Under the pieces are notes generated by a model. The model ran no database searches and was not told the DNA's origin. It saw nothing but the letters and a program-made list of their open reading frames with translations. A DNA stretch of 64,000 bases, from IMG/VR virus record IMGVR_UViG_3300049793_000366, positions 434,001 through 498,000 of that record; one strand, given 5' to 3'. The position numbers were made by a program, and so were the translations under genes. Within the stretch, counting starts at the first letter, position 1. Each line of letters begins with the position of its first letter. Shown here one piece after another: positions 17,574 through 51,269 of this stretch.

Positions 17574-17890
17574 CACTAAACGAGAAGTTCAGAAGTGAAT
17601 TTGGAACTGATGTGTTCTTAGAAATGATGGATATCTTCATCACGGGTGATACTCCGTTTATGCAATGTCTGAGCATTGGTACTACCAGTCCAATTACTAA
17701 AGATGTCTACCTTTTAGTTGGTGATACTTACATTCATGCTTCTTATACATTATGTATGACGAGTGATGATGGTGTTGGTAATGGTTGGGACTTGGAGATA
17801 TTGGAATATGGTAAAGAGATAACGATGCCATTGGGACCAGCGTTTGACGACCACAGGCGCAATATGAGAATCAATAAAATAGTTGATTAA
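17570..17890 (+). CDS. hypothetical protein, C-tag
   Basis: Ends RRNMRINKIVD. Confidence 0.75.
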   Translation: MTLNEKFRSEFGTDVFLEMMDIFITGDTPFMQCLSIGTTSPITKDVYLLVGDTYIHASYTLCMTSDDGVGNGWDLEILEYGKEITMPLGPAFDDHRRNMRINKIVD

Positions 17891-18131
17891 GCTTTTCCTC
17901 CCTACGTATATGAAGGTCTGAGAAGTGTTTAGAAAATTCAACACGCCTACTTTCATTAAAGAAGTACATACCATCAACATCATCTTTTATCTTGAATGTC
18001 GTAGTATCTATTTGTCTCTTAAGATTACTTGTGGTTGATAGAAATAATTCATAGTCATATTGTCTTCCTTCTTCGAAAACAACATTACCTGTATAGTCAT
18101 AATATGATTTAATACAAATACATTTCTTCAC
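17871..18131 (-). CDS. CxC-family small protein, C-tag
   Basis: KKCICIK...EGRQYDY...FSKHF...RREEKLNQLF. Confidence 0.8.
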   Translation of the reverse strand: MKKCICIKSYYDYTGNVVFEEGRQYDYELFLSTTSNLKRQIDTTTFKIKDDVDGMYFFNESRRVEFSKHFSDLHIRREEKLNQLFY

Positions 18132-18922: not shown

Positions 18923-19189
18923 ATGAAATGTAGATGCATCTTAACACTTGATGCCGGTAAACGAATGGGTATATTCGAAGAAGGTAAATTATATGAATTC
19001 TTTGAATCAGATTTGAGTGACCATATCGGTAAGTCAACAATGCGAAATGGTTGGGAATTAACTAATCATTACACGGTTGTTAGTGACACTGGATCAACAC
19101 ACACATTCTCAACCAGTGAATTCGATGAACGTTTTGTAGATATTAAAGAACACCGCGATAAGAAAATTAATAAAATATTAAATGGATAA
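18923..19189 (+). CDS. CxC-family small protein, C-tag
   Basis: MKCRC...EGKLYEF...HRDKKINKIL; TCCGTATATTTA upstream. Confidence 0.8.
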   Translation: MKCRCILTLDAGKRMGIFEEGKLYEFFESDLSDHIGKSTMRNGWELTNHYTVVSDTGSTHTFSTSEFDERFVDIKEHRDKKINKILNG

Positions 19190-19559
19190 CATAGTTAAAG
19201 AAGGTGATGTACTCGTGTGTAAAAAACGAGATACAATTGGTGCATATCCAGATACGCTACACTTATTAGAAATAGGTAAGCATTATCGTATAGAAAGACT
19301 TGATGCTATAAACTCAACGATAGGACTATTTCGCGCATATATACTTATTGATAGCAAACCAGTTCAATTCTACTATCCATTGGATATTAATCTAGTTCGC
19401 AACCAATTGAACATGACCAAGCACCGTGATGAAATTGATTATGTAAACAAACTTATAGATGGTTGTTATGAGTGGGGCTTATTAACATATTTTGATACAG
19501 TAGAAAATTTTAGAGAATTACAATTAAATAAATTAGTAGATGGTTACTATCAAAAATAA
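19182..19559 (+). CDS. hypothetical protein, C-tag
   Basis: LVCKK...IGKHY...FRELQLNKLV. Confidence 0.75.
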   Translation: MDNIVKEGDVLVCKKRDTIGAYPDTLHLLEIGKHYRIERLDAINSTIGLFRAYILIDSKPVQFYYPLDINLVRNQLNMTKHRDEIDYVNKLIDGCYEWGLLTYFDTVENFRELQLNKLVDGYYQK

Positions 19560-19800
19560 TGCTGATACCGTTGGTAGTGCTATATTGACTTATAAGCAGT
19601 GTGGTAAGTTAATAGCACGTATGGACTTTAAAACATCAGAGGGTTTGGATTTCAAGAAGGGTGAGATAATAGAATATACTCACTACGAAAACTATGGTGA
19701 TAAGATATACTATACAATAACCAGCACTCTTTATCTTAGTAGCGAGGTTGTTATGGAGTTGAATGAGTATAGAGAAGAGCAAATAAATAAATTGGATTAA
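19540..19800 (+). CDS. hypothetical protein, C-tag
   Basis: Ends YREEQINKLD. Confidence 0.75.
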   Translation: MVTIKNNADTVGSAILTYKQCGKLIARMDFKTSEGLDFKKGEIIEYTHYENYGDKIYYTITSTLYLSSEVVMELNEYREEQINKLD

Positions 19801-20147
19801 TGGAAAAGTATATTTTAGGTGTAGAACTAGAACCGAATGGTAGTATTAAAATTGTTCAAATGTGTGTTTCTAAATGTATCTGTATTAAATATAATGCTGA
19901 TCCATACACACAGCTAAGTACTTCAATACCAAAGACTGATTTCAATGAAGGTAATATCTATTACTATGGTATTGATGATACTCGACCTGTGACTAATCCA
20001 TACTTTGTAGTAGAAGAGGGTAAAACACATAGGTATTTCACAGAAGACGAATTCAATGCACATTTCGTTGACTACATAAAAAATAGAGAAAATAAAATAT
20101 CAAACATAGTTGATGAATCATTAAACAATTCATCAGATTGTGAATAA
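19800..20147 (+). CDS. CxC-family protein, C-tag
   Basis: KCICIK...EGNIYYY...FNAHF...NRENKISNIV. Confidence 0.8.
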   Translation: MEKYILGVELEPNGSIKIVQMCVSKCICIKYNADPYTQLSTSIPKTDFNEGNIYYYGIDDTRPVTNPYFVVEEGKTHRYFTEDEFNAHFVDYIKNRENKISNIVDESLNNSSDCE

Positions 20148-23806: not shown

Positions 23807-24279
23807 TGAAACACTTAAAGCTATTCGAAGGATTTATGGATGACATCAGACAATCAGTTGTTGATGTGTTCGACAATGCTCGAAAGCCTTATGATGCTTG
23901 TTTACACGAGTTAATCGATGATTATGGTTTACAATTCGATGGTGATAAAATCACTAATATGTTTTCAGATAGGTGTTTAGTGTACTATATAAACGAACCA
24001 ACTGAACTGAGCTTAGAAGCTGTAAATAAGATAGTCAGAGCAGTCAAAAGATTGGGTGAGTTCGAAGAACTTCGTATCGCTGGTGCTATCACACTTTACT
24101 TTAATAACTCACCGATATCAGCATCATTCGATAAGAAAGTTGATATACATAAATATGTTAGAAATATAATGAATACTAAGCTAACTCAATATTATGGTGA
24201 TGAACACGAAAGAGTAATAGAACCAGAATATTCAGAGTTTACTTTCACAGTAAAATTCACATTATACCAAGCAACTTAA
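23806..24279 (+). CDS. hypothetical protein, N-motif
   Basis: Starts MKHLKLFEGF. Confidence 0.8.
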   Translation: MKHLKLFEGFMDDIRQSVVDVFDNARKPYDACLHELIDDYGLQFDGDKITNMFSDRCLVYYINEPTELSLEAVNKIVRAVKRLGEFEELRIAGAITLYFNNSPISASFDKKVDIHKYVRNIMNTKLTQYYGDEHERVIEPEYSEFTFTVKFTLYQAT

Positions 24280-24481
24280 GTTTAAGCTCCCTCAATTCAT
24301 GTGCTGGTCTAAAGTGACCAAAGAAGAATACTGCTGGATATCTTATTGTACCATTGAATAGATTAGAAACTTCTACACCATTTATATCAAAACTAGTTTT
24401 ATTTAGATAAACAGTGTGTCCAACCTTTATAGTAACCTTATAATGCACATCCGTAAATTGCTTTGTGCAAACATATAACAT
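24257..24481 (-). CDS. hypothetical protein, C-tag
   Basis: MLYVCTK...LRELKLKLL; start moved. Confidence 0.65.
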   Translation of the reverse strand: MLYVCTKQFTDVHYKVTIKVGHTVYLNKTSFDINGVEVSNLFNGTIRYPAVFFFGHFRPAHELRELKLKLLGIM

Positions 24482-24526
24482 ACTTGTTATATTTAGAAAA
24501 ATGAATAGGTTTTTAATATATACGAT

Positions 24527-24916
24527 ATGAAACACATTAAGAAATTCAACGAAGATGCCGAGCATTTGGTTAGTAAGGAATACTTAGAGCCATTCTTCTT
24601 GGAGCTTAGTGATGTGTACGGTGAAGATGTTGAAATAACATTTTCTGGTGAAACTCAGGCTGATGTTGAACTTACATTCTCCAATATCATTTTAAATAGA
24701 ATGAATAAAGGATATAAAGTAGATGGTAGTGAACATGATTACTCATATGATGTTCTAATCGATGCTTATTCAAAAGCCGCTAATATTACCACATCCTTGA
24801 AAAAGATAGCGAAAAAGATTGATGCTGATGGTCTTTACCAATGTAGAATGTTTGTAAATAAACCATCACATAAGATAAAATATAGCTTCATTGTGTTTAA
24901 TAAACACTTTGATTAA
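24527..24916 (+). CDS. hypothetical protein, N-motif
   Basis: Starts MKHIKKFNE; AATATATA upstream. Confidence 0.8.
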   Translation: MKHIKKFNEDAEHLVSKEYLEPFFLELSDVYGEDVEITFSGETQADVELTFSNIILNRMNKGYKVDGSEHDYSYDVLIDAYSKAANITTSLKKIAKKIDADGLYQCRMFVNKPSHKIKYSFIVFNKHFD

Positions 24917-27920: not shown

Positions 27921-28225
27921 TAACACTTACCAAAATGGGTGATAGCTACGTTGTTGTAGAGTCCGATGGTGTACAGTTATGTATCTTAACCACCTCACTC
28001 ACTGTCTACGATAAGAACACACACGAAGCATATAAGAATATTATGCTACTGCTTAACGCAGACCAGCAACAACTTATATTAGGTAAGTTCAAGATAAAGG
28101 AAACAGAACACGATAAACCGTTCGATGATGTGGAATTCATCCGGGATAACCTAATGAACATCGAACACCCAGAATTCTTATTAGTAAGAAGAGACCTAAA
28201 ATTAAGTGAACTAACGAGTGATTAA
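27917..28225 (+). CDS. hypothetical protein, C-tag
   Basis: Ends RRDLKLSELTSD. Confidence 0.75.
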   Translation: MITLTKMGDSYVVVESDGVQLCILTTSLTVYDKNTHEAYKNIMLLLNADQQQLILGKFKIKETEHDKPFDDVEFIRDNLMNIEHPEFLLVRRDLKLSELTSD

Positions 28226-28574
28226 GCAGAAATATAAATACAAACTTAAATATTCAGAAATAAAAGAAACAGACTCAGCTACCAATAGAAACATATTAGT
28301 ATTATCCACCAAAGATGAAGTATTAATAGAATTCATATTAAGTAACTCAATAGAATCAGGTAATAGTAAATACCAATTGAAACGAGCGATATACTTCCTG
28401 AACCAAAGCATTAACCACACAGGCGAGTACGAATACGTTACCATCTGTTGTAGTTATTTGGATGTTGGGATGGATGATATAGACTTCATTGAGTATTACT
28501 TCAACGAATTGATGGATGATGATAAACTTAAACACATTAGAAGACATTTAATAATTGATAAAGCTTTAGAATAA
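28218..28574 (+). CDS. hypothetical protein, C-tag variant
   Basis: Ends RRHLIIDKALE. Confidence 0.7.
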   Translation: MIKQKYKYKLKYSEIKETDSATNRNILVLSTKDEVLIEFILSNSIESGNSKYQLKRAIYFLNQSINHTGEYEYVTICCSYLDVGMDDIDFIEYYFNELMDDDKLKHIRRHLIIDKALE

Positions 28575-28744
28575 TGGAAAAAATTAAAAAAGAACAATTT
28601 GCTGTTTATGAGAAAAAACCAGCTCATCAAAAAGACGTTAATGGTATCATTTTAGCTCCATATAATACCAAAGAAGAGGCTGAAAAAGCTGGTACTAAAT
28701 ATGGTTACTCTGGGGATAACTATTATGTTGATAAATTAATATAG
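28574..28744 (+). CDS. small hypothetical protein (56 aa, absent from ORF track)
   Basis: TAATG-coupled, MEKIKKEQFAVYEKKP...YYVDKLI*, fills the gap. Confidence 0.6.
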   Translation: MEKIKKEQFAVYEKKPAHQKDVNGIILAPYNTKEEAEKAGTKYGYSGDNYYVDKLI

Positions 28745-28746
28745 AC

Positions 28747-28992
28747 ATGAGAGGATTTTGTAAATGTAGAGTAACATTCAAAAAAGATATACACACCTAC
28801 GTTGGTAACCAAATATATGAATACCGTATATATGGTAGTATGTATACCGTTGAGACACCATCACTGCTTAACCCAGATTTAAGTGTCGGGTATCAATTCA
28901 GTCAAAAAGCATTTGATGAGCAATTTGATGAGTTTACCCAGCAACAAATAAGAGAAATGAGATTAGATACCGTATTAAAAGACAATGAGTAA
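28747..28992 (+). CDS. CxC-family small protein, C-tag
   Basis: FCKCRV...GNQIYEY...FDEQF...IREMRLDTVL. Confidence 0.8.
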   Translation: MRGFCKCRVTFKKDIHTYVGNQIYEYRIYGSMYTVETPSLLNPDLSVGYQFSQKAFDEQFDEFTQQQIREMRLDTVLKDNE

Positions 28993-29251
28993 AGAATCAC
29001 AACTAATAGAAGGCTATGAGAATTTCAAAGGCTTTGAAGTAAACTCTATTGTCATATGCGTAGATGCCAAAGATTGCATATCCATCAAAGAAGGTGATGA
29101 GTATACCGTATTGAACCAACCACACTATCATAACATGAGAGGCGTTGGTGTAGAGGTTAGTAGTCCAGGTACTTCTAATTTTTATCATCCAGGTCGATTC
29201 ATCAGTAAAGAAGAACTAAGAAATAAGAAAATCCAAACCATATTAGAATGA
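28985..29251 (+). CDS. small protein, C-tag
   Basis: VICVDA...EGDEYTV...LRNKKIQTIL. Confidence 0.8.
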   Translation: MSKESQLIEGYENFKGFEVNSIVICVDAKDCISIKEGDEYTVLNQPHYHNMRGVGVEVSSPGTSNFYHPGRFISKEELRNKKIQTILE

Positions 29252-29550
29252 CTGTACAATTTCATAGAACAGACACCGAGAAGTTTATACTACTCATCTT
29301 CACTGGTGGATCTCCGCTCGATAACCGCAAAGCTCTGGATAACTACCTAAGCGATTTAAAAGTTGATGATAACGGAGAATATGTAGATTATAACCGCTAT
29401 GACTTCTGTGATATCAAATACTATATGGATGTCTTATGCCTCTTATATAAGAAACCACACAGCTTAAACGATGAAGATTTTGTTGATTATAATAAGAACT
29501 ATCCAACAGCACTGAAAAGAATTAAAGGACTAAATAAATTACTGGTATGA
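29248..29550 (+). CDS. hypothetical protein
   Basis: ATGA coupling; ends RIKGLNKLLV (tag-like). Confidence 0.7.
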   Translation: MTVQFHRTDTEKFILLIFTGGSPLDNRKALDNYLSDLKVDDNGEYVDYNRYDFCDIKYYMDVLCLLYKKPHSLNDEDFVDYNKNYPTALKRIKGLNKLLV

Positions 29551-29741
29551 GCCAACGAATGGAAGAATTTAACTACGTAAGTGGTGGGCATCACAATAAA
29601 TTAATTGTGGTTGATATATTATATATGCTAAAGAAACAAATGCGAACAGAAGCTTTTCATAGACCAATTGAAATAGTATCAGACTCAAAAGAACTTCTTA
29701 TAATCGCGGATTATGTCAAAAACAATAAGATAAAATTCTAA
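29547..29741 (+). CDS. hypothetical protein
   Basis: ATGA coupling. Confidence 0.65.
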   Translation: MSQRMEEFNYVSGGHHNKLIVVDILYMLKKQMRTEAFHRPIEIVSDSKELLIIADYVKNNKIKF

Positions 29742-30002
29742 ATGAAATGTATCTGTCATAACGATTTGCTTGAAGGAACAAGGTCAGCTTTCATCAAAGG
29801 TAACATATATGAATATAGTATCTACAACAACGGTAAAACCATATCACTTGGTGGAACTTTCATTGACTTCGAAGGATTCGAATATGTGGCAGACAAACAA
29901 GCACTATCAATTGATATGTTCACCCATTACTTTAGAGATTTAGAAGAACACAGAGATTTAACCATCAATACACTATTAGAATGGCAATGTACCAAGAAGT
30001 AA
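29742..30002 (+). CDS. CxC-family small protein, C-tag
   Basis: MKCIC...KGNIYEY...FTHYF...HRDLTINTLL. Confidence 0.8.
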   Translation: MKCICHNDLLEGTRSAFIKGNIYEYSIYNNGKTISLGGTFIDFEGFEYVADKQALSIDMFTHYFRDLEEHRDLTINTLLEWQCTKK

Positions 30003-30232
30003 GAGATATAGTTTGCACATCATCCAAACTATACCCACAATATATTAAAGGTAAACACTATCGTGGTAACTTTAGGTTATATTGCTGGGATGTCGTAGAT
30101 GAATACAATAACATGATGAACTATGGTATAGATAAATTCAATGAGTATTTCACCGAGTTAGAAGAATTAAGAGATAATAAGATTAAAACAATATTAGATA
30201 ATGAAGTTCAAACCAATATTCAGCATAGGTGA
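29981..30232 (+). CDS. CxC-family small protein, C-tag
   Basis: IVCT...KGKHY...FNEYF...LRDNKIKTIL. Confidence 0.8.
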   Translation: MAMYQEVRDIVCTSSKLYPQYIKGKHYRGNFRLYCWDVVDEYNNMMNYGIDKFNEYFTELEELRDNKIKTILDNEVQTNIQHR

Positions 30233-30431
30233 CTTAGTATATGTGGACACCAATACAATAGCAACCATTCTAAGAACCCGCGCCAATATAGAATTTCTCA
30301 TCGAATACGAAATGTCAAAGAAATACATCAATATGTCAGCTAAACGAAAATACTGGGTCTATTATGAAGTCTTGGTCAAATATAACACAGGTATCATACG
30401 CGAACAAAAGCTCAATAATCTATTACAATGA
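30201..30431 (+). CDS. small protein, C-tag
   Basis: FSIGDLV...IREQKLNNLL. Confidence 0.75.
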   Translation: MKFKPIFSIGDLVYVDTNTIATILRTRANIEFLIEYEMSKKYINMSAKRKYWVYYEVLVKYNTGIIREQKLNNLLQ

Positions 30432-30661
30432 AAGCAAAATGTATTAAACCAATCATAGATGAATTCGGAGACCATCAAATGGAACTAATACTGAATGAGA
30501 ACTATGAATATAGAATAATACTGACCGATAAACCGGCTGATAGGTTCATTTATAAACTCATCGTAAAAAATAAAGAATATTCATTAACAACAGAGTATTT
30601 CGATAGATATCTACTCGACATAACCATTCATAGAGATAACCAACTCGATACACTATTATGA
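30428..30661 (+). CDS. CxC-family small protein, C-tag
   Basis: MKAKCIK...FDRYL...HRDNQLDTLL. Confidence 0.8.
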   Translation: MKAKCIKPIIDEFGDHQMELILNENYEYRIILTDKPADRFIYKLIVKNKEYSLTTEYFDRYLLDITIHRDNQLDTLL

Positions 30662-30927
30662 GCAAGAAAGAAGAAATATCACTCATCTGTATAGAAGATA
30701 TTGTAGACCTGTTCACCAAAGTCGCACAGTTTAAGAAAGGCATAACCTACAAAGCATTCTTAGACCCACTACACATTGTCTACATCTATAATGAATCAGG
30801 CGCACTCTTCCAAAAGTATAACCTGATGAATACCTATGAACACGATGAATATACAAAACACTTCGAGATACCCTGGAGACACCGCGATAATAAAATAAAC
30901 AATATATTGGAAGAACATGGGAACTGA
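30658..30927 (+). CDS. CxC-family small protein, C-tag
   Basis: LICIED...KGITY...HRDNKINNIL. Confidence 0.8.
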   Translation: MSKKEEISLICIEDIVDLFTKVAQFKKGITYKAFLDPLHIVYIYNESGALFQKYNLMNTYEHDEYTKHFEIPWRHRDNKINNILEEHGN

Positions 30928-31153
30928 ATTAAGAATATGTCGGTGCGTCAATGATGCCTATATCGGTTACCGATTAACTATTGAATATAAATTCAGCGTG
31001 GTGTATGTAAACCAACACGTAGATATCTATCGGGTCTATTTGGAAGATAGGTCAACCTTTAACCATTTCACCAAACTACAATTCAATAAATGCTTCATCG
31101 ATTTAACCGCCATAGAAGAAAGAGATACTAACATTCAAAAAGTATTAGAGTAA
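30917..31153 (+). CDS. CxC-family small protein, C-tag
   Basis: ICRCVN...FNKCF...ERDTNIQKVL. Confidence 0.8.
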   Translation: MGTELRICRCVNDAYIGYRLTIEYKFSVVYVNQHVDIYRVYLEDRSTFNHFTKLQFNKCFIDLTAIEERDTNIQKVLE

Positions 31154-31374
31154 TGGAAAAGGAAGAAGAATTAATCATCCGGTGCATAAAAGACACACCC
31201 AGCTTTTTTAAAGATAAATGCTATAAAGCAGTTATCAATCATATAGACCACGAGATTAACATATTCAGTGAATATTTAAAGGTAGAATTTGAATATCCAT
31301 CCTATTACTTCAATGAACATTTCCAATTAGAATGGCAACGCCGTGACCAAATTATAGACTCAATACTCAAATGA
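31153..31374 (+). CDS. CxC-family small protein, C-tag
   Basis: IRCIKD...FNEHF...RRDQIIDSIL. Confidence 0.8.
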   Translation: MEKEEELIIRCIKDTPSFFKDKCYKAVINHIDHEINIFSEYLKVEFEYPSYYFNEHFQLEWQRRDQIIDSILK

Positions 31375-31631
31375 AAGCAATCTGTATTAAACCCATCATT
31401 GAACACATAAACTGGGAAACCATCACTCTATCCGAAGGAGTCATATATGAGTATGAACTGATGATTGATACCGCCCAAGCCACCTTCGGAAGAGTCTATC
31501 AAGTTATGATAAATAATAACCCATATAGTATGAAACCAGAATTCTTTAACAAACATCTTAAAACCATTGACGAACACCGAGAGAAACAATTAGACAAACT
31601 ATTAAATGAAGATAAAAGCCATCTGTATTAA
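31371..31631 (+). CDS. CxC-family small protein, C-tag
   Basis: MKAICIK...EGVIYEY...HREKQLDKLL. Confidence 0.8.
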   Translation: MKAICIKPIIEHINWETITLSEGVIYEYELMIDTAQATFGRVYQVMINNNPYSMKPEFFNKHLKTIDEHREKQLDKLLNEDKSHLY

Positions 31632-31857
31632 AACATTCAAAGTCGGCTATGGAATCAAAGAATCCAACTTCATCGAAGGGGAAATCTATGACTATGAACG
31701 ACTACTCATCGGTATTATGAATAATGATACCAGAGAATATAGAATACATTCGGGTGATAACCATTTCAAATTAAACCCGCAATTCTTTAAACAACACCTG
31801 ATGGACTTAGAACTATACAGAGAGAAACAATTAAAAGACGTATTGAATGAGCGATAG
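31606..31857 (+). CDS. CxC-family small protein, C-tag
   Basis: KAICIK...EGEIYDY...YREKQLKDVL. Confidence 0.8.
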   Translation: MKIKAICIKTFKVGYGIKESNFIEGEIYDYERLLIGIMNNDTREYRIHSGDNHFKLNPQFFKQHLMDLELYREKQLKDVLNER

Positions 31858-32221
31858 AATGATACCAGAACAATTAGATACACTTATCTGTATTGAAGAC
31901 TATTATGAAAAACTCACCTATGGTAACTATAAACTGAACATCCTATTCAAAAAAGGCAAACAATACATCGCCTATGAACTCAGAGGTATAGTCTATGTAC
32001 TAAATGAACAAAGCCTATTCGTACAGTTTAACCTTCTCACCAGTAAAGAACTATCCGATTACAATAGACACTTTACCGTACTAAGTACACACAGAGAAAC
32101 ATTGATTGATTCTATTATTACTAATAACATTGAGAAAGATGAAACGGTTAAAGAAAGCGAGCCGCAGGCGAGCTGTAGAGCTTCCGAACCCTTAAATTCA
32201 TTAAATCCTCCGCGAGATTAG
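31847..32221 (+). CDS. CxC-family protein, C-tag followed by an extension
   Basis: LICIED...KGKQY...HRETLIDSII. Confidence 0.75.
   Translation: MSDRMIPEQLDTLICIEDYYEKLTYGNYKLNILFKKGKQYIAYELRGIVYVLNEQSLFVQFNLLTSKELSDYNRHFTVLSTHRETLIDSIITNNIEKDETVKESEPQASCRASEPLNSLNPPRD
32156..32174 (+). other. GNA-triloop mini-hairpin with tandem G.A mismatches
   Basis: AGC-GA-GCC-GCA-GGC-GA-GCT, GC-rich in an AT-rich context. Confidence 0.6.
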
Positions 32222-32243
32222 TCGAAATTAACCATATTCCACC

Positions 32244-32480
32244 ATGATAACATTTACCAAACAATGCATCTGTATAAACGACAAGAACCCAGTATCACAG
32301 GAACAAACCCTGTTCAGAAAAGGAACCATCTATGGCTACGAATTTATGACAGAAGGTATCTATAAAGACGAATACGTTCTGAGCATTAATACAATGGGTC
32401 TTCCACCAGATATGTTCAACCACTATATGATGGACTTACAAGAATACAGAGAGAAACTACTAAACAACCTAACCGATTAG
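32244..32480 (+). CDS. CxC-family small protein, C-tag
   Basis: QCICIND...KGTIYGY...YREKLLNNL. Confidence 0.8.
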   Translation: MITFTKQCICINDKNPVSQEQTLFRKGTIYGYEFMTEGIYKDEYVLSINTMGLPPDMFNHYMMDLQEYREKLLNNLTD

Positions 32481-32483
32481 AAA

Positions 32484-32702
32484 ATGGGCTATATTACCAC
32501 CGTCATATGTACCGAAACTGTTAAGAATATTACCATAGAGTATAAGAAAGGTCAACACTATGAAGCATACTTCTACCTCGATAAAGTTAGTATCAACCAT
32601 AACAATACCTCGATAGAATATGAATGTGATGAATTTTTTAAAGAACACTTCAAACCACTCTATAAACACCGAGATAATCAAATCAATAACATATTAGATT
32701 AA
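32484..32702 (+). CDS. CxC-family small protein, C-tag
   Basis: VICTET...KGQHYE...FKEHF...HRDNQINNIL. Confidence 0.8.
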   Translation: MGYITTVICTETVKNITIEYKKGQHYEAYFYLDKVSINHNNTSIEYECDEFFKEHFKPLYKHRDNQINNILD

Positions 32703-33022
32703 TGTACACCGAAGAAGAATTAGAATATACCTGGCAAAACTATCATAAGAATCAAAAACATTGGTTCAAATGTATATGTATAAAATCATTCGGTATATAC
32801 GAAGCCGGTAACATATATGAATATAACATAAACAAAACAAATGTCACCGATACCTCAAACGGCTATAAATCATATATCAAATGGGATTTCTATGTAAAGT
32901 TCGAGAAATACCCAAAACTATACACAGATACCAATATAGTAAGATATAACCAATTCATAGAATGTATGATAGATGTATCAAAATATAGAGAGAATCAAAT
33001 CAATAACATATTAGAACAATGA
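32702..33022 (+). CDS. CxC-family protein, C-tag
   Basis: KCICIK...AGNIYEY...YRENQINNIL. Confidence 0.8.
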   Translation: MYTEEELEYTWQNYHKNQKHWFKCICIKSFGIYEAGNIYEYNINKTNVTDTSNGYKSYIKWDFYVKFEKYPKLYTDTNIVRYNQFIECMIDVSKYRENQINNILEQ

Positions 33023-33252
33023 TTCAGATAGATTCATGTACAACCTGTCCAAATTGTGGTAATGGCTCATTATCAGAAGTTAAAGTATATCTAAATAAGA
33101 ATGTACTTGGACTAACATATAAGAAATACTCACATACTAAACAAGTATGCCTGTTCAACTATAAAACAAGCATGGGTATATGTAACTATGACTCAGATAA
33201 TACATTAGACGTTATAAGAGATAATAAACTTCAAACACTATTAGACCAGTAA
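33019..33252 (+). CDS. small Zn-ribbon-like protein, C-tag
   Basis: CPNCG...C...C; IRDNKLQTLL. Confidence 0.75.
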   Translation: MIQIDSCTTCPNCGNGSLSEVKVYLNKNVLGLTYKKYSHTKQVCLFNYKTSMGICNYDSDNTLDVIRDNKLQTLLDQ

Positions 33253-33491
33253 TGATAAACACACTAATCAAACAAGGATTCGTCTATGATATGGAAGATA
33301 ACCTCTGGTATGATGAAAACATCTACCGTATCAAATATAAACTCAGAGTCAGTATTCTAAAACGTATAGACGGTTCTTATAAAGCTACACTATATACAGG
33401 TGGGTATAATAACTCAATGACCATTAATAACTCATATGAATTAGAAGCCGCTATAAGAGATTCACAATTAGAACGATTAATGAAAGTATGA
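33252..33491 (+). CDS. small protein, C-tag
   Basis: Ends IRDSQLERLM. Confidence 0.75.
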   Translation: MINTLIKQGFVYDMEDNLWYDENIYRIKYKLRVSILKRIDGSYKATLYTGGYNNSMTINNSYELEAAIRDSQLERLMKV

Positions 33492-33730
33492 AAGTTATAT
33501 GTATTAAGAACTATAAACATACCGGCTTCGATATGATGTTCTTTATGGATAATTTATATGATGCTGATATATCCAAAGATATGGCTTATGTATGTAGCAA
33601 TCAATACCTGATGGGTAAACAAGTATCCTTTGGTATGTCCTATGATGAATTCTATGAACACTTTAAAGTATTAGCAGATTATAGAGAAGAACAAATTAAT
33701 AACCTTCTTATAGAAAACAAACATGATTAA
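33488..33730 (+). CDS. CxC-family small protein, C-tag
   Basis: MKVICIK...FYEHF...YREEQINNLL. Confidence 0.8.
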   Translation: MKVICIKNYKHTGFDMMFFMDNLYDADISKDMAYVCSNQYLMGKQVSFGMSYDEFYEHFKVLADYREEQINNLLIENKHD

Positions 33731-34013
33731 TAAAATTATATGTATCAAAAGCTATGTACAAAAAGGTTCAATATCCTCTTATAGCTTTACTTTCTTAGAA
33801 GGACATACATATGAGTATAATCCATTAGAAGAGGTTGGTGGTGTGATAGTAACACTATATACAGGAGAATATAGGAACACACATAGAGTAGGATTCAATA
33901 TTACCCGTGGTGAATTCTATGAACACTTTAAGATACTAAAAGATTATAGAGAAGAACAAATAGACAGCTTGCTTGCGAACGAAGTGAGCAGTCTGAATAA
34001 TTTAAACAGTTAG
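33723..34013 (+). CDS. CxC-family small protein, C-tag
   Basis: IICIK...EGHTYEY...FYEHF...YREEQIDSLL. Confidence 0.8.
   Translation: MINKIICIKSYVQKGSISSYSFTFLEGHTYEYNPLEEVGGVIVTLYTGEYRNTHRVGFNITRGEFYEHFKILKDYREEQIDSLLANEVSSLNNLNS
33974..33990 (+). other. GNA-triloop mini-hairpin with tandem G.A mismatches
   Basis: TGC-GA-AC-GAA-GT-GA-GCA. Confidence 0.6.
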
Positions 34014-34025
34014 AACAATTACACT

Positions 34026-34244
34026 ATGAAGACAGTTTTATTATGTATGAAGAGTAATCACTATTCAGATAGACATAAACAAGAGTTTGAAAAAGGTAGA
34101 TTATATAACGCACAAGTAGTCGATAATAGAGTCAAGATTACAGATGATTTAGGTAATACAAACTCATTCTCATTCATATATGTTTATCAGTATTTTGTAG
34201 ATGCTGCTGAATATAGGAAGGAACAGATAGATAAAATACTGTGA
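34026..34244 (+). CDS. CxC-family small protein, C-tag
   Basis: LLCMK...KGRLYN...YQYF...YRKEQIDKIL. Confidence 0.8.
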   Translation: MKTVLLCMKSNHYSDRHKQEFEKGRLYNAQVVDNRVKITDDLGNTNSFSFIYVYQYFVDAAEYRKEQIDKIL

Positions 34245-34392
34245 AATGAGTTAAAATGTATATGCTAAATTTGACTGTTTTCGCAGATTTACATGACGTT
34301 TATGTGAAGCCTGTTTGCGGGAACTATTATAATGCCACACTTGTACCACCTTAGTTGTCAGTCTATGTCTAACCTTGTCAGCCAGTCAGAAC

Positions 34393-34497
34393 CCGTCAGA
34401 TTGTTCATAACTTCTATTTTATCCACAATTTATGGACATAAGGTTGTTGATAACTTTCTATCAGTCTGACGGTAATCTTTTATTAAATTTAAACAAT
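34393..34497. promoter_or_regulatory. DnaA-box-like cluster bracketed by an 8-bp inverted repeat and followed by an AT-rich tract (origin-like)
   Basis: TTATCCACA 34419-27, TGTTGATAA 34445-53, TGTTCATAA 34402-10, TTATGGACA 34430-38; CCGTCAGA 34393 and TCTGACGG 34465. Confidence 0.55.
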
Positions 34498-34713
34498 ATG
34501 GAAACACCAATCACTGATAAACAAATAGTTGAGTATTTAAAATACTTGAAGACCGAATTCACTGAACTATGTAAAACTCCGGATAGGAGTATAAAAGAAA
34601 TGTCTTACCGTAGTGTATTACTTGAGATGTTTCAGATTGAGACTAACAATGAGAAACACTTCGATGTACTTAGTAAAACACTAAATGACTATCGTATATC
34701 AAAGCGTAATTAA
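34498..34713 (+). CDS. hypothetical protein
   Basis: Start moved to ATG 34498; stop codon supplied by the repeat (AAT TAA). Confidence 0.65.
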   Translation: METPITDKQIVEYLKYLKTEFTELCKTPDRSIKEMSYRSVLLEMFQIETNNEKHFDVLSKTLNDYRISKRN

Positions 34714-34790
34714 AATGCCACACCTCAAAGCCTTATTCGGTGAGCATTCAAATTATAATGCCACAGTCTGACGGAGTTAAAGTGCCACAC

Positions 34791-34809
34791 TGCTCGTCTC
34801 CGACTCGCA
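34791..34809 (-). other. GNA-triloop mini-hairpin with tandem G.A mismatches
   Basis: Minus strand TGC-GA-GTC-GGA-GAC-GA-GCA. Confidence 0.6.
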
Positions 34810-34842
34810 TTAAACTACCACACCTTTCGGACATATAATGGT

Positions 34843-35070
34843 ATGTTTCAATCTATGAATGAGTTAGAGGTAAAGGCTGACGGTATGTTATGCTACAATG
34901 GTGTAAAGCTTCTTAGTGTTGAGGCTTTGAGTGACTTTGTATCTCTAACTGGGTTTGAACCTTTACAGGCTTTACAGACGTACTATATAACCACTCAAAC
35001 ACATCAGAGGAATCAAAAGCTTGAGATTCTATTTGATGGAGTTAAAGTGCCACACCTCAAACCGTTATAG
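34843..35070 (+). CDS. hypothetical protein, C-tag
   Basis: QRNQKLEILF, then runs through a repeat copy. Confidence 0.65.
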   Translation: MFQSMNELEVKADGMLCYNGVKLLSVEALSDFVSLTGFEPLQALQTYYITTQTHQRNQKLEILFDGVKVPHLKPL

Positions 35071-35101: not shown

Positions 35102-35156
35102 AATGCCACACCTCAACGCCTTATCTGGTAAGGATTAGAATTAAAATGCCACACTT

Positions 35157-35381: not shown

Positions 35382-35392
35382 AATGCCACACT

Positions 35393-36143: not shown

Positions 36144-36401
36144 ATGCCACACCAACCATATCATATGTTATTACCGAAGGTTCGAAATGTATCACCGAGT
36201 ACATTGGGTCAGAATATACAGATTATTAACACTGCGTATATGATACCAATGCGAAAGTGTTGTGATTGTGGTAATGTGATTAATATAATAGATGATGAGT
36301 TTGAGACAAAGCCTCGTATGTTTTTGTGGGTTAAGTTGGAGACTGATTATAGGTGTTGTGTATGTATGCGTGATAATAAGATTCGTAAGATATTTAAGTG
36401 A
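36144..36401 (+). CDS. CxxC...CxxC small protein, C-tag
   Basis: ATG supplied by the repeat (MPH); CCDCG...CCVC-MRDNKIRKIF. Confidence 0.7.
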   Translation: MPHQPYHMLLPKVRNVSPSTLGQNIQIINTAYMIPMRKCCDCGNVINIIDDEFETKPRMFLWVKLETDYRCCVCMRDNKIRKIFK

Positions 36402-36625
36402 TGTCTGGACTTACTTGTATATGTAAAGCTGACCATGCTTATCGGTTTATCAAGGGTAGGACTTATACTTATATGATAATTAATGGGCGGTTTAGTGTTT
36501 TAAATAGGGATGCTAAGACTTGGTATAACTTTCACGATGATAACTTCCATGATGATTCGGTTAATTTTCACTTATTTTTTGAGTCTATACGTGATTATAA
36601 TCTAAATGAATTACTGAGCGAATAG
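36398..36625 (+). CDS. CxC-family small protein, C-tag
   Basis: LTCICK...KGRTYTY...IRDYNLNELL. Confidence 0.8.
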   Translation: MMSGLTCICKADHAYRFIKGRTYTYMIINGRFSVLNRDAKTWYNFHDDNFHDDSVNFHLFFESIRDYNLNELLSE

Positions 36626-36789: not shown

Positions 36790-37047
36790 ATGCCACACCA
36801 CTTCAAATGTATATGTAAGAATGAGTATCTACAATCCGGTAGGGAAGATACTTTAGTTATCTTCATACTCAATGAGATATATCTGGTGGAGAATACCGCG
36901 AGTGGGAACTACTTATTAACTGGTAATATCCGTAGTGGTGATAATATTTTGCGTGAAATAGTATCTTTAGATGATGTAGGCTTTAAACGCTATATGATGC
37001 ACATAGACGAGTATAGGGAGAATAAGTTAGAAGCATTGCTTAATTAG
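36790..37047 (+). CDS. CxC-family small protein, C-tag
   Basis: ATG from the repeat (MPH); KCICK...YRENKLEALLN. Confidence 0.8.
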   Translation: MPHHFKCICKNEYLQSGREDTLVIFILNEIYLVENTASGNYLLTGNIRSGDNILREIVSLDDVGFKRYMMHIDEYRENKLEALLN

Positions 37048-44634: not shown

Positions 44635-44857
44635 TACTTATATCTGTGTAAAAGAGTGGAGTCTTGCTTCTATACCATATAGAAAGGGTGATAGGGTACA
44701 TACTGCTGATATATCATCAAAGATATCACCAAGTAAATTCATTAGCTTAACTAATGGTGCTATATTCCGCACACGTACATTTTTAGAACACTTTAAACAT
44801 ATCGATGATTACATTCGTGATATTGATAAGAATATAGACCTTGTGTTAAATGATTAA
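44627..44857 (+). CDS. CxC-family small protein, C-tag variant
   Basis: YICVKE...KGD...FLEHF...IRDIDKNIDLVL. Confidence 0.75.
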   Translation: MSNTYICVKEWSLASIPYRKGDRVHTADISSKISPSKFISLTNGAIFRTRTFLEHFKHIDDYIRDIDKNIDLVLND

Positions 44858-45116
44858 CGGTCTACCAATAAAAACCTGCGTATGTATTAAGAACTACGCT
44901 AAACGAAACGATACCTATCGCTATACCATCGGTGAGGTCTATAAGTATCAAGTAGTCAGTCATTATATAAGCCCTGATGTATGGCGTGTCTATACCACTG
45001 ATGCAGACTATGACTTCTATGAAGTATCAAAGGATCCATGCGAACCAAAGATAATTGAGTACTTTCAAGATATACAAACGAATAGGGATTCTAAACTTAA
45101 GAAGCTATTGAAATGA
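44850..45116 (+). CDS. CxC-family small protein, C-tag
   Basis: TCVCIK...IGEVYKY...NRDSKLKKLL. Confidence 0.8.
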   Translation: MINGLPIKTCVCIKNYAKRNDTYRYTIGEVYKYQVVSHYISPDVWRVYTTDADYDFYEVSKDPCEPKIIEYFQDIQTNRDSKLKKLLK

Positions 45117-50279: not shown

Positions 50280-50702
50280 ATGGAATCATATATTAAAACA
50301 AAGATTGAGGATTTTATCACTATACTATTGGAATCAAAGCTAGACATGGTGATGTTTGATATCTATATGACTGAGCGGTACAAGACCAAGAAGCATTGGT
50401 ATACGTTTAAGATTGATACGAAAGTACCAGTGAAGCCTAATTCAATATATGGTTTAAGCTTTTCATTCAGTACACAGATGGTTACATTTTCGGTATGCGT
50501 GGATGATGGTAGTATCATATTGGAGAAGGATGACTATTTAACGTTTAAAGATACTGATATCGAATTTGCTAAGAAGTGTGCAATTCTAATTGAAGAGAAG
50601 CATAAGATAAAGCAAGTGACAATATTGGATAGTATAGTAGATACAACGAACACTGAGCTTAAGTTGAACCGTGAGAGTAATATAAGTAAATTAAAGATAT
50701 AG
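50280..50702 (+). CDS. hypothetical protein, C-tag
   Basis: Ends NRESNISKLKI. Confidence 0.75.
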   Translation: MESYIKTKIEDFITILLESKLDMVMFDIYMTERYKTKKHWYTFKIDTKVPVKPNSIYGLSFSFSTQMVTFSVCVDDGSIILEKDDYLTFKDTDIEFAKKCAILIEEKHKIKQVTILDSIVDTTNTELKLNRESNISKLKI

Positions 50703-50995
50703 TGGTTATTACGACTAAAGTATATTGTATAAGGGATTGGTATTATAATAATGCTGAGAAGCCTGTGTTTATTAATAGCCACACATATGGTGCTATTAAG
50801 GGTAGCAATACCTATATAGTAGTATCTGATGATATTGGTTCGATGGCATCTAATGTACCAATTACTTTTCATGTAAATGATGATATTGATTGGAATGATA
50901 ATAGAACATTCGGTAAATATTTTATAACCGAGGTAGAATATAAAGAGAGTAATAGAGATACTAAAATTAATGAAATAATTGACGATGTATTTTAA
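50702..50995 (+). CDS. CxC-family small protein, C-tag
   Basis: KVYCIRD...FGKYF...NRDTKINEII. Confidence 0.8.
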   Translation: MVITTKVYCIRDWYYNNAEKPVFINSHTYGAIKGSNTYIVVSDDIGSMASNVPITFHVNDDIDWNDNRTFGKYFITEVEYKESNRDTKINEIIDDVF

Positions 50996-51269
50996 TCCTG
51001 CATTGAAAGTAATAGCGGTTCAACCATCTAAGTTCAGTGGTCCCGATGGTGATTACCTTGCTCCTGATATAACAGTTGGTAATGCATATGAAGTTGTCTC
51101 TACGGATAAGTTTGTATTTGAAGACAATCGGTTTAGTGAATTAGTAGGTTCTGTACCAGAAGAATATCTATTAGTGGATGATTCGGGTAGAACATCATGG
51201 CACAATGCTAAATACTTTAAGACAATCTCTGAGTACAGAGACGATATAATAAATAAAATACTGATATGA
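50979..51269 (+). CDS. small protein, C-tag
   Basis: VGNAYEV...KYF...YRDDIINKIL. Confidence 0.8.
   Translation: MTMYFNPALKVIAVQPSKFSGPDGDYLAPDITVGNAYEVVSTDKFVFEDNRFSELVGSVPEEYLLVDDSGRTSWHNAKYFKTISEYRDDIINKILI

What the first reader, a model, noticed from the sequence alone, without database searches (positions are those of the whole stretch)
28747..34244. Dense array of about 20 tiny tagged genes, many of one CxC...GxxY...FxxxF family
Seen: consecutive 70-125 aa ORFs sharing K(C/V/A)(I/C)C(I)K, a central (E/K)GxxY(E/D)Y and F-x-x-(H/Y)-F just before the tag, yet highly divergent in between. More copies lie at 17871, 18923, 19800, 20843, 36398, 36790, 44627, 44850 and 50702. Inference: an SH3/Tudor-like beta-barrel repertoire with a constant tail and variable face, i.e. 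adaptor-like proteins in which the barrel picks a target and the tag recruits a common effector such as ClpC.
Basis: partly seen in the sequence, partly recalled or inferred. Interest (0 to 1): 0.65.

Follow-up and report, generated by a model that had tools for sequence, protein, structure and literature searches.

The report
Tagged mini-barrel gene array, huge phage
A soil "megaphage" carries a run of 23 tiny genes, most encoding one unnamed family of SH3-like mini-barrels with variable loops and a constant C-terminal helix. The same helix ends about one in eight of all the phage's proteins, which suggests an undescribed common docking or addressing tag.

Summary
Window 28574-34244 (+) is a gap-free, one-strand run of 23 ORFs of 56-124 aa. 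Sixteen fall in one HMM-defined family, 18 if orthologues are counted.

AlphaFold (pLDDT 88) gives a small beta-barrel whose best PDB matches are all SH3 domains, though weakly (Z 4-5.5). A C-terminal helix follows. The scaffold and tail are conserved, and three loops are hypervariable and indel-prone.

The tag is peptide-level: all six Arg codons are used. It is also modular. About 97-107 of about 792 genes here carry it at the C-terminus on unrelated ORFan heads, as do 91 of about 995 genes in an independent 642-kb Mahaphage-type genome.

The family is phage-only, with 770 metagenomic clusters and no Pfam, PHROG or PDB relative. Array content turns over between related phages.

The ClpC idea is untested. 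The phage does encode a ClpC-like ATPase without the N-domain, plus a ClpP. The complex prediction gave no verdict, and small phages without a Clp gene keep the tag. The function remains inferred.

The parts
28574..28744 (+). 56-aa ORF, first of the gap-free run; no family signature and no tag
   Evidence: no Pfam hit
28747..28992 (+). family member (81 aa), tagged
   Evidence: HMM E 4.9e-13
28985..29251 (+). 88-aa tagged ORF with a barrel-like VICVD...GDEYTV pattern; divergent member by orthology
   Evidence: Below the HMM threshold here. Its 51%-identical orthologue L049:737-997 hits the family HMM at 6e-6.
29248..29550 (+). 100-aa ORFan; only a weak tag-like end (KGLNKLLV)
29547..29741 (+). 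64-aa ORFan, no tag
29742..30002 (+). family member (86 aa), tagged
   Evidence: HMM E 3.3e-20
29981..30232 (+). family member (83 aa), tagged
   Evidence: HMM E 1.6e-15
30201..30431 (+). 76-aa ORF with the tag only (REQKLNNLL)
30428..30661 (+). family member (77 aa), tag at the very C-terminus
   Evidence: HMM E 7.3e-15
30658..30927 (+). family member (89 aa), tagged
   Evidence: HMM E 2.3e-17
30917..31153 (+). family member (78 aa), tagged
   Evidence: HMM E 8.8e-13
31153..31374 (+). family member (73 aa), tagged
   Evidence: HMM E 2.4e-11
31371..31631 (+). family member (86 aa), tagged; the protein that was modelled
   Evidence: HMM E 3.3e-22. AF2 pLDDT 87.9: barrel in residues 2-54, helix 56-62, strand 63-65, helix 66-83.
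31606..31857 (+). family member (83 aa), tagged
   Evidence: HMM E 9.5e-19
31847..32221 (+). family member (124 aa); tag followed by an unconserved extension of about 33 aa
   Evidence: HMM E 3e-14
32244..32480 (+). family member (78 aa), tag variant REKLLNNL
   Evidence: HMM E 1.2e-19
32484..32702 (+). family member (72 aa), tagged
   Evidence: HMM E 7.5e-17
32702..33022 (+). family member (106 aa, N-terminal extension), tagged
   Evidence: HMM E 1e-13
33019..33252 (+). 77-aa Cys-rich (CxxCxxC...C) Zn-ribbon-like head with the tag; not a barrel-family member
   Evidence: Weak Pfam Zn_ribbon_NOB1 hit, E 0.008. A 64%-identical orthologue in L048 keeps the tag. The AF2 model is poor (pLDDT 62.5) but the tail is helical at 62-76.
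33252..33491 (+). 79-aa tagged ORF; divergent member by orthology
   Evidence: The orthologue L048:13700-13963 (56% identical) hits the family HMM at 1.6e-4.
33488..33730 (+). family member (80 aa), tagged; absent or merged in a close relative
   Evidence: HMM E 1.7e-19. L003, at 86% nt identity, has one gene where the window has 33488 and 33723.
33723..34013 (+). family member (96 aa), tagged
   Evidence: HMM E 1.8e-19. dN/dS 0.66 against the L003 orthologue.
34026..34244 (+). family member (72 aa), tag at the C-terminus; last gene of the run
   Evidence: HMM E 3.8e-18. In L003 a Zn-ribbon-like tagged gene occupies this slot.
17871..18131 (-). dispersed family copy
   Evidence: HMM E 9e-17
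18923..19189 (+). dispersed family copy, first of a second small cluster
   Evidence: HMM E 8.3e-18
19182..19559 (+). family copy (125 aa)
   Evidence: HMM E 3.9e-8
19540..19800 (+). family copy (86 aa)
   Evidence: HMM E 3.2e-8
19800..20147 (+). family copy (115 aa)
   Evidence: HMM E 1e-17
   Evidence: HMM E 9.4e-18
24257..24565 (-). family copy; the ORF start is probably over-extended
   Evidence: HMM E 1.9e-9
36398..36625 (+). family copy
   Evidence: HMM E 5.9e-14
36790..37047 (+). family copy
   Evidence: HMM E 7.4e-14
   Evidence: HMM E 1.1e-11
44850..45116 (+). family copy
   Evidence: HMM E 1.3e-16
50702..50995 (+). family copy
   Evidence: HMM E 3.5e-14
50979..51269 (+). family copy
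   Evidence: HMM E 3.1e-11

Best explanation
Shown: the array is a tandemly expanded, fast-turning-over cluster of one phage-only protein family in a Mahaphage-type huge phage from soil. Each member has three parts:
- an SH3-like beta-barrel of about 55 residues, with a conserved core and three hypervariable, indel-prone loops;
- a conserved linker, F-x2-[HY]-F-x-D-[LI];
- a C-terminal amphipathic helix, E-x-R-[DE]-x-[KQ]-[IL]-[ND]-x-[IL]-L, that usually ends 0-2 residues before the stop.

Inferred: the barrels are a diversified binding repertoire, most likely accessory host-interaction, takeover or anti-defence proteins. The helix is a modular, trans-acting docking or assembly element that connects them, and about 60-70 other tagged ORFans of the phage, to one common partner or to each other. 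New members arise by local duplication and cassette replacement. The partner is not identified. The phage's own N-domain-less ClpC/ClpP is one candidate, and a conserved host protein is at least as likely.
For: Family and array. The nearest paralogues are neighbours within the array.

Fold: pLDDT 87.9, and SH3 domains dominate both PDB searches. Atlas and BFVD neighbours are all uncharacterised viral proteins.

Conservation map: constant scaffold and tail, variable loops.

The tag is a peptide-level signal. All six Arg codons and many Leu/Ile codons are used, and third positions are uninformative. In another phage's array, Arg is encoded by CGT/AGA/AGG and Ser by TCN/AGY.

The tag is modular and clade-wide:
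- 97 of 792 genes here, 86x enriched at C-termini.
- 70 of them are outside the barrel family, with almost all heads singletons.
- 91 of about 995 genes in LR756502.1, 41x enriched.
- It is kept in 12 of 14 orthologue pairs with 23-59% identical heads.

Tagged proteins are ORFans. About 50 of the longer tagged proteins and array neighbours gave only one Pfam hit above threshold.

Turnover:
- Conserved flanks at 75-83% nt enclose non-alignable array genes in L049/L050.
- There is a cassette swap and a copy-number change in L003.
- Only 14% of tagged genes have a homologue in LR756502.1, against 35% of untagged genes (my arithmetic).

Wider occurrence: 770 representative clusters, and a 15-gene array in an unrelated 17-kb contig.
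Against: - No partner is known, and the one complex prediction (ClpC-like ATPase with a member) gave no verdict.
- The helix has the lowest confidence in the model (pLDDT 78 falling to 65). I could not inspect its contacts, so it could simply cap the barrel.
- SH3 similarity is weak in absolute terms (E 0.2-1, Z up to 5.5).
- Binding by the loops is pure inference.
- The only unsaturated dN/dS estimate is one pair of 90 codons (0.66).
- Divergence of array members is not clearly greater than that of neighbouring ORFans.
- There are no expression data. The stretch was found in one DNA run of a soil metagenome and in no RNA run.
- Tagged genes abut a downstream gene more often than untagged ones (72% vs 38%), so some constraint from overlapping initiation regions cannot be excluded.
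Confidence: 0.5

Rival explanations
1. The tail docks the proteins, alone or with a bound target, onto the phage-encoded ClpC-like unfoldase and ClpP. They would then act as degradation adaptors or be timed-degradation substrates.
For: - The phage encodes a 709-aa ClpC-like ATPase with an M-domain/UVR motif and a GVGF ClpP-docking loop.
- It also encodes a bona fide ClpP (E 1e-68) outside any structural module.
- The four other large relatives tested that have multi-copy families also encode this ATPase at 67-68% identity.
- The tail sits at the extreme C-terminus.
Against: - The co-occurrence comes from a single lineage, so it is not independent evidence.
- The ATPase lacks the Clp_N domain that known adaptors use.
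- Tagged proteins occur in 21-34 kb phages with no Clp ATPase.
- Tails mostly end in polar or acidic residues and are helical, unlike ssrA-type degrons (general knowledge).
- No MecA, ClpS or SspB homology was found.
- The complex prediction gave no verdict and is not counted either way.
Confidence: 0.12
2. The tail is an intrinsic structural or self-association helix: a cap of very small domains, or a dimer or oligomer interface. There is no common external partner, and its spread reflects a shared architecture for tiny phage proteins.
For: - The helix follows directly on the last strand, and the linker plus helix is the best-conserved third of the family.
- Conserved residues cover an arc of about 200 degrees of the helix, more than one packing face needs (my reading).
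- Many small phage proteins act as oligomers (general knowledge).
Against: - The same nine-residue pattern is kept on unrelated heads of 55-622 aa. It is also kept across orthologues whose heads have diverged to 23-59% identity.
- The conserved polar residues (R, D/E, K/Q, N) suggest a specific recognised surface.
- No oligomer prediction was run.
Confidence: 0.25
3. The tail is an addressing signal. It would load about 100 small proteins into the very large capsid for co-injection, or into another phage-built compartment. This would resemble the T4 capsid-targeting sequence or encapsulin cargo-loading peptides.
For: - It is a short terminal motif on many unrelated small ORFans.
- It is absent from about 77 genes between 25 and 100 kb of the record.
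- Huge capsids have room for cargo (general knowledge).
Against: - No virion proteomics exist.
- The tail shows no cleavage-site-like feature.
- Small phages carry the tag too.
- No capsid-protein interaction was tested.
Confidence: 0.08
4. The conserved tail is a by-product of nucleotide-level constraints. Its codons form the A/T-rich, Shine-Dalgarno-less initiation region of the next overlapping gene, or they are homogenised by recombination between paralogues.
For: - The genome has almost no SD sequences, and regions upstream of start codons are about 50% A and 10% G.
- Tagged genes abut a downstream same-strand gene in 72% of cases against 38% (OR 4.2, p 5e-11).
- The tail is made of residues with A/T-rich codons.
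Against: - Arg uses all six codons, and 38 of 97 are CGN. Third positions carry little information.
- Ser switches between the TCN and AGY codon families.
- Thirty tagged genes have no abutting gene.
- The position-specific pattern with an invariant Arg is not explained by composition.
Confidence: 0.04
5. The barrels are small nucleic-acid-binding proteins of the Sso7d, chromo or cold-shock type (barrel plus C-terminal helix) that coat or regulate DNA or RNA.
For: - The architecture of a small barrel with a C-terminal helix resembles Sso7d (recalled, not tested).
- Several aromatic residues on strands are conserved.
Against: - The family is acidic to neutral. Median pI is 5.7 and only 7% of members have pI above 9.
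- No Sso7d, CSD or chromo entries appear among the top structural matches.
- Hypervariable loops fit protein recognition better.
Confidence: 0.04

Closest known systems
SH3-fold small beta-barrels (eukaryotic SH3 domains; many small uncharacterised phage proteins, e.g. BFVD hits such as Bacillus phage G gp659)
   Same: Predicted strand order and size. The three variable loops lie where the RT, n-Src and distal loops form the SH3 ligand face.
   Different: There is no sequence relationship to any Pfam SH3 family. The match strength is only fold-level (Z 5.5 at most). The conserved C-terminal helix and the invariant Cys in strand 1 have no SH3 counterpart. Phage G itself has no family member by HMM.
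Poxvirus ankyrin/PRANC (F-box-like) and other viral multigene adaptor families (analogy recalled from general knowledge)
   Same: The logic is the same: many paralogues with variable binding heads and a short constant C-terminal motif, clustered in variable genome regions, with copy number changing between relatives.
   Different: There is no homology. The host is a bacterium with no ubiquitin system. The partner of the tail is unknown. Here the tail also sits on about 60-70 unrelated heads.
Clp adaptor and degron systems (MecA-ClpC, SspB XB tail-ClpX, ssrA tag)
   Same: A short C-terminal element shared by many proteins, and a phage-encoded ClpC-like ATPase and ClpP present in the same genome.
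   Different: There is no homology to MecA, SspB or ClpS. The phage ATPase lacks the N-domain those adaptors bind. The tail is helical and usually ends in polar or acidic residues. It is present in phages without Clp.
Terminal addressing peptides of capsid-like shells (T4 capsid-targeting sequence, encapsulin cargo-loading peptides; recalled)
   Same: A short terminal peptide shared by otherwise unrelated cargo proteins.
   Different: The T4 signal is N-terminal and is cleaved. Encapsulin peptides have a different consensus. Nothing here shows virion association.
Mahaphage-clade huge phages of Al-Shayeb et al. 2020 (PMC7162821); GenBank LR756502.1 (642 kb) and LR745206.1 (635 kb)
   Same: The Clp ATPase is 67-68% identical. 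These genomes have 14 and 9 family matches, and LR756502.1 has 91 tagged genes. GC is about 31-33% in the window and in LR756502.1. The paper predicts Bacteroidetes hosts for its five genomes of more than 634 kb, which fits the SD-less starts here.
   Different: That paper does not mention the family, the tag or Clp: the terms 'Clp' and 'paralog' occur 0 times. Matching the two records to the paper's genomes rests on size only. No terminase or capsid phylogeny was done here.

Membership tests
SH3-like barrel fold | Small barrel of 5-6 strands with SH3 strand order, giving significant structural superposition on solved SH3 domains | tested here: inconclusive
   All of the top 50 Foldseek PDB rows are SH3 domains except three (two chains of an integron cassette protein and one backbone-fold methods entry), at prob 0.7-0.96, E 0.24-1.2 and TM (by target) 0.5-0.68. 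Most VIA-align rows are SH3, at Z 4.2-5.5 and rmsd 2-4 A over 53-64 residues. The result is consistent but below the tool's own Z 8 caution line.
SH3 domain families (Pfam SH3_1, SH3_2, SH3_9, bacterial SH3 and others) | Sequence match to a curated SH3 profile | tested here: not met
   No Pfam hit for 10 window members or for 100 family members. One member gave a sub-threshold hit to PF20287 SH3DP, E 0.0014.
SH3 domain function | Proline-rich-peptide binding groove (ALYDY, WW and SNY motifs) | not tested
   The motifs are not evident in the consensus, and no structure-based check was possible.
Tudor / chromo | Aromatic cage for methyl-lysine or methyl-arginine | not tested
   No Tudor or chromo entries appear among the top matches. 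Cage geometry could not be inspected.
ClpC adaptors (MecA/YpbH type) | Homology to the MecA C-terminal domain | tested here: not met
   No Pfam hit of any kind.
ClpC adaptors (MecA/YpbH type) | Docking on the ClpC N-domain plus M-domain | tested here: not met
   The phage ATPase has no Clp_N domain. About 50 acidic residues lead straight into the conserved TPVLD pre-D1 segment. An M-domain/UVR motif is present.
ClpC adaptors / substrates | Physical binding to the ATPase | tested here: inconclusive
   One ESMFold2 complex job scored ipSAE 0.00.
ssrA-type C-terminal degron | Unstructured tail ending in non-polar residues (LAA-like) at the very C-terminus | tested here: not met
   The tail is predicted helical. 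It usually ends [IL]-L followed by 0-2 polar or acidic residues.
Any named phage protein family (PHROGs) | Profile match | tested here: not met
   The best hit is phrog_4927 (unknown function) for 2 of 100 members, E 3e-5. Nothing matched the window members at E below 0.01.
Solved structures by sequence | PDB relative | tested here: not met
   Best E 0.24 with the 100-sequence profile.
Mahaphage-clade huge phage (context of the array) | Clustering with the >540-kb Bacteroidetes-associated genomes in a terminase or capsid phylogeny | not tested
   Indirect evidence only:
- Clp ATPase 67-68% identical to LR756502.1 and LR745206.1.
- Shared family and tag.
- The source contig is 711,805 bp and a relative is 709,085 bp.
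- Starts lack SD sequences.

The most novel reading that the evidence does not exclude
Huge phages of this clade use a proteome-wide C-terminal address tag. One receptor reads the helix E-x-R-[DE]-x-[KQ]-[IL]-[ND]-x-[IL]-L on about 100 different small proteins per genome. That receptor could be the phage's N-domain-less ClpC/ClpP, the capsid interior, or a conserved host hub. The hypervariable SH3-like barrels would then be a target-binding repertoire that brings host proteins to it, a bacterial-virus counterpart of the poxvirus PRANC/F-box adaptors.
Probability: 0.2. Interest if true: 0.9.

Novelty: new variant of a known kind. Interest (0 to 1): 0.72.

Why it matters
Most genes of the largest known phages are unexplained small ORFs. 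This work shows that a tenth or more of them in one clade share a short C-terminal helix under peptide-level selection. The largest class behind that helix is a hypervariable mini-barrel family that expands in tandem arrays.

This turns some 100 ORFans per genome into one testable question: what reads the tail? The answer could be a protease, a capsid, a host hub or the proteins themselves. Any of these would assign a mode of action to hundreds of proteins at once. It could also yield a portable tag-and-receptor pair and a natural small-binder scaffold.

If the tail proves to be only a structural cap, the finding reduces to a new domain family of unknown function.

Tried and rejected
- Megablast of the array against GenBank phages found no match. 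tblastn of two members found none either.
- The word-index protein search with the paralogue alignment found only the window's own proteins. The exhaustive profile search was needed.
- Pfam and PHROGs scans of members, tagged non-members, larger tagged proteins and neighbours gave nothing useful.
- The PDB sequence search gave nothing.
- Complex prediction of the phage ClpC-like ATPase (709 aa, 30-row alignment) with the 86-aa member scored 0.00. This gives no verdict and is not evidence either way.
- The sigma-70 promoter and terminator scan of 26000-37500 was at shuffle level.
- The Atlas search of a 272-aa tagged protein gave no usable hit.
- AF2 of the Zn-ribbon-like tagged ORF reached only pLDDT 62.5, so no fold search was run on it.
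- Bacillus phage G and Tenacibaculum phage pT24 were tested as possible cultured models, and neither has the family.
- Five literature searches found no description of the family or the tag.
- Only one DNA run (soil, probably the source sample) holds the stretch.
- For the ORF census only, the 33 fetched stretches of the uncultured bacteriophage record LR756502.1 were joined inside a script.
- The nucleotide-level explanation of the tag was considered and rejected on codon usage.
- The nucleic-acid-binding explanation was considered unlikely on charge.

Full report
**Where the window lies.** The window is bases 434001-498000 of a 507,910-bp IMG/VR virus record flagged 'provirus' and estimated 97% complete. 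GC is about 33%. In the protein collection its proteins sit on a contig of 711,805 bp. A close relative lies on an NCBI metagenome contig of 709,085 bp. The real genome is therefore probably about 0.71 Mb, and the 508-kb record is probably a trimmed version (inference). The stretch is found in one public DNA run, from a soil metagenome, and in no RNA run.

The nearest GenBank phages by the Clp ATPase are two uncultured genomes of 642,428 and 634,780 bp, at 67-68% identity. Their sizes match the 642- and 634-kb Mahaphage-clade genomes of Al-Shayeb et al. 2020. That paper predicts Bacteroidetes hosts for its five genomes of more than 634 kb (PMC7162821). Genes here lack Shine-Dalgarno sequences: 5% have an SD-like 4-mer, and upstream regions are about 50% A. 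This fits a Bacteroidota host (inference from general knowledge).

**The observation.** Between 28574 and 34244 there are 23 + strand ORFs of 56-124 aa with no gaps, mostly with short overlaps. Pairwise phmmer joins 14 into one family. An HMM iterated over all ORFs of at least 40 aa in the record converges on 41 members. Sixteen are in the array, with E 2e-11 to 3e-22, and thirteen are elsewhere in the window.

Two further array ORFs, 28985 and 33252, have orthologues in related phages that hit the HMM. That makes 18 of 23 members in a wider sense. ORF 33019 has a Cys-rich Zn-ribbon-like head, ORF 30201 has only the tail, and three ORFs (28574, 29248, 29547) have neither signature. Twenty of the 22 ORFs in the stated span end in the tail motif.

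**The fold.** With the 26 window paralogues as alignment, AlphaFold2 models ORF 31371-31631 at mean pLDDT 87.9. The model has six strands in residues 2-54, a short helix at 56-62, a strand at 63-65 and a C-terminal helix at 66-83. All of the top 50 Foldseek PDB rows are SH3 domains except three: two chains of an integron cassette protein and one backbone-fold methods entry. Probabilities are about 0.9, but E is 0.24-1.2.

The Foldseek-independent search also returns mostly SH3 domains, at Z 4.2-5.5. This supports an SH3-like small barrel at fold level only. Neighbours in BFVD and the ESM Atlas are all uncharacterised viral proteins.

The conservation map shows a constant scaffold:
- K2, [CV]3, I4, C5, I6 and K7 in strand 1;
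- F20, G23, Y26, Y28 and F54 in the barrel;
- F59, [YH]62, F63, D65, L66, E68, R70, [DE]71, [KQ]73, I74, N75, I77 and L78 in the linker and tail.

Three hypervariable stretches carry most insertions: residues 8-19, 29-42 and 46-53. They lie where SH3 loops form the ligand face (inference). Members are acidic to neutral, with median pI 5.7.

**The tail is a peptide-level, modular motif.** In a crude set of 792 non-overlapping genes, 97 have R-[DEN]-x-[KQ...]-[ILMV]-x-x-[ILVM]-[ILFVM] within 12 residues of the C-terminus. In 64 of them 0-2 residues follow the motif. The motif is 86-fold denser there than inside proteins, and shuffles predict 0.6 such genes. Adding family members with looser variants gives 107.

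The invariant Arg uses all six codons, Leu and Ile use many, and third positions carry little information. In the array of an unrelated contig, Arg is encoded by CGT/AGA/AGG and Ser by TCN/AGY. Selection therefore acts on the peptide, not on a DNA or RNA element or through gene conversion.

Seventy of the 97 tagged genes are outside the barrel family, and nearly all of their heads are singletons. One tagged protein carries an L7/L12-CTD-like segment (Pfam E 1.3e-6). No other tagged protein scanned has a Pfam domain above threshold, here or in LR756502.1.

**The tag is clade-wide.** I ran the same census on the independently assembled 642-kb genome LR756502.1. There, 91 of about 995 genes carry the tail. 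The enrichment is 41-fold, shuffles predict 0.55 genes, and 21 genes hit the family HMM. Of 14 tagged proteins with a homologue in that genome, 12 homologues pass the same regex and the other two have near-variants. Their heads are only 23-59% identical.

Only 14% of tagged genes have such a homologue, against 35% of untagged genes (my arithmetic). The tagged set therefore belongs to the fast-evolving accessory genome.

**Distribution of the family.**
- The exhaustive profile search finds 770 representative proteins at E of 1e-3 or better. Nearly all are 70-110 aa and match over their full length.
- Of the top 150, 134 are external and 117 of these have the tail.
- A 17-kb freshwater-type contig has at least 15 tandem members, all ending A-E-W-R-[DE]-x-Q-I-[ND]-S-I-L.
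- IMG/VR phages of 344 kb and 190 kb have 17 and 8 matches. LR756502.1 and LR745206.1 have 14 and 9.
- Phages of 21-34 kb carry a single tail-bearing protein.
- Bacillus phage G and Tenacibaculum phage pT24 have none.
- No Pfam, PHROG or PDB family matches, and five literature searches found no description.

**Turnover.** Nearest paralogues are neighbours in the array, which indicates local duplication. A contig with 86% nt identity has one gene where the window has 33488 and 33723. It also has a Zn-ribbon-like tagged gene in the slot of 34026.

In a more distant relative, flanks align to window 25683-27153 and 34260-37567 at 75-83% nt. The 11-14 family genes between them do not align at the DNA level, and only some have 29-53% identical protein counterparts. 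Neighbouring ORFans are also divergent, so I do not claim the array evolves faster than its surroundings. The only unsaturated orthologue pair gives dN/dS 0.66 over 90 codons, which is suggestive only.

**The ClpC idea.** Window 8219-10348 encodes a 709-aa double-AAA+ Clp ATPase with a UVR/M-domain and a GVGF loop. It has no Clp_N domain: an acidic tail of about 50 residues replaces it. A genuine ClpP lies at 189.4 kb of the record, beside a nuclease and a thymidylate synthase rather than in a structural module.

The four large relatives tested that have multi-copy families also encode this ATPase at 67-68% identity. These phages form one lineage, so the co-occurrence is not independent evidence. 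N-less ClpC-like proteins of about 700 aa are common in metagenomes. The small tag-bearing phages have no Clp ATPase. The one complex prediction gave no verdict. I rate the Clp model at about 0.12.

**Other readings.** A purely structural or self-association role for the helix remains plausible (0.25). A capsid or compartment address signal is possible (0.08).

A nucleotide-level origin gains some support from position. The tail codons form the SD-less initiation region of the next gene, and tagged genes abut a downstream gene in 72% of cases against 38%. That association is confounded by the arrays themselves and is contradicted by codon usage (0.04). Nucleic-acid binding is unlikely on charge (0.04).

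**Verdict.** The functional half, target picking and ClpC recruitment, is untested.

The more striking result goes beyond the finding's coordinates. The tail is a modular C-terminal motif on about 9-14% of all genes in at least two huge phage genomes, and it appears undescribed. Best explanation, at confidence 0.5: a diversified binder family plus a shared docking or assembly helix, with the partner unknown.

Noticed in passing
whole record; contigs behind: The window's proteins are on record from a 711,805-bp contig, and a relative sits on a 709,085-bp NCBI contig. The IMG/VR record is 507,910 bp and flagged 'provirus'. The true genome is probably about 0.71 Mb, among the largest phage genomes, and about 200 kb may have been trimmed as 'host'.
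   Followed up: partly
window 8219-10348 (+); G000:C1:189419-189946 (-), L044:3408-4067: The phage encodes a ClpC-like double-AAA+ ATPase that lacks the Clp_N domain (acidic N-tail, UVR/M-domain, GVGF loop). It also encodes a separate bona fide ClpP (Pfam E 6e-68) next to a PD-(D/E)XK nuclease and a thymidylate synthase. N-less homologues of about 700 aa at about 70% identity are abundant in metagenomes.
   Followed up: partly
whole record: Only 5% of genes have an SD-like 4-mer upstream, and the 25 nt before start codons are about 50% A and 10% G. This is the pattern of Bacteroidota-type, SD-independent initiation. In the arrays, the initiation region of each gene is the tail-coding end of the previous gene.
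   Followed up: partly
window 22246(-), 24513(+), 26699(-), 38381(+), 39852(+), 56691(+); 86 sites in the record: The motif TTTAATATATA lies 5-10 nt before ATG codons and is 21-fold enriched in upstream regions. It looks like a phage promoter giving near-leaderless transcripts. Several of the genes it precedes begin M-[RK]-[YH]-[LI]-K, which may mark a second paralogue family.
   Followed up: no
window 36077(-), 37997(-), 38886(+), 42593(-), 44044(-), 47367(-), 48236(-), 52962(+), 58774(-); 41 sites in the record: A second conserved upstream element of about 35 nt, ATTTGG-N17-TCCGTATATTT, looks like a bipartite phage-specific promoter. A core-only copy sits just before the family gene at 18923.
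   Followed up: no
G000:C1:426700-427353 (L009), about 7 kb upstream of the window: A 217-aa tagged protein has a segment matching the ribosomal protein L7/L12 C-terminal domain (PF00542, E 1.3e-6, above the curated cut-off). It is the only Pfam domain found above threshold on any tagged protein scanned.
   Followed up: no
window 2463-3239, 5578-6381, 7179-8123 (+): The window also encodes a DFP/CoaBC-like flavoprotein C-terminal domain (E 6e-67), an R2K-clade ATP-grasp enzyme (E 3e-46) and a radical SAM protein. These look like auxiliary metabolic genes just upstream of the Clp ATPase.
   Followed up: no
L004:8870-9460 (JGI 3300032753 contig): A 196-aa gene sits inside the 15-gene array of an unrelated phage contig. 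It begins like a family member (KVGDKIIC...) but carries a Cas12f1/TnpB-type zinc-ribbon (TNB) hit and lacks the tail.
   Followed up: no
L037:8517-12336 (34-kb IMG/VR phage): In a small complete phage, the single tail-bearing 85-aa protein is the gene immediately upstream of a 1166-aa SNF2 helicase-methyltransferase fusion, on the same strand.
   Followed up: no
L003 (NCBI GCA_013573075.1 contig, 590 bp) against window 33250-34290: At 86% nt identity, the relative has a hybrid or single gene in place of 33488 and 33723, and a Zn-ribbon-like tagged gene in place of the barrel gene 34026. The breakpoints fall at gene borders, consistent with cassette exchange.
   Followed up: partly
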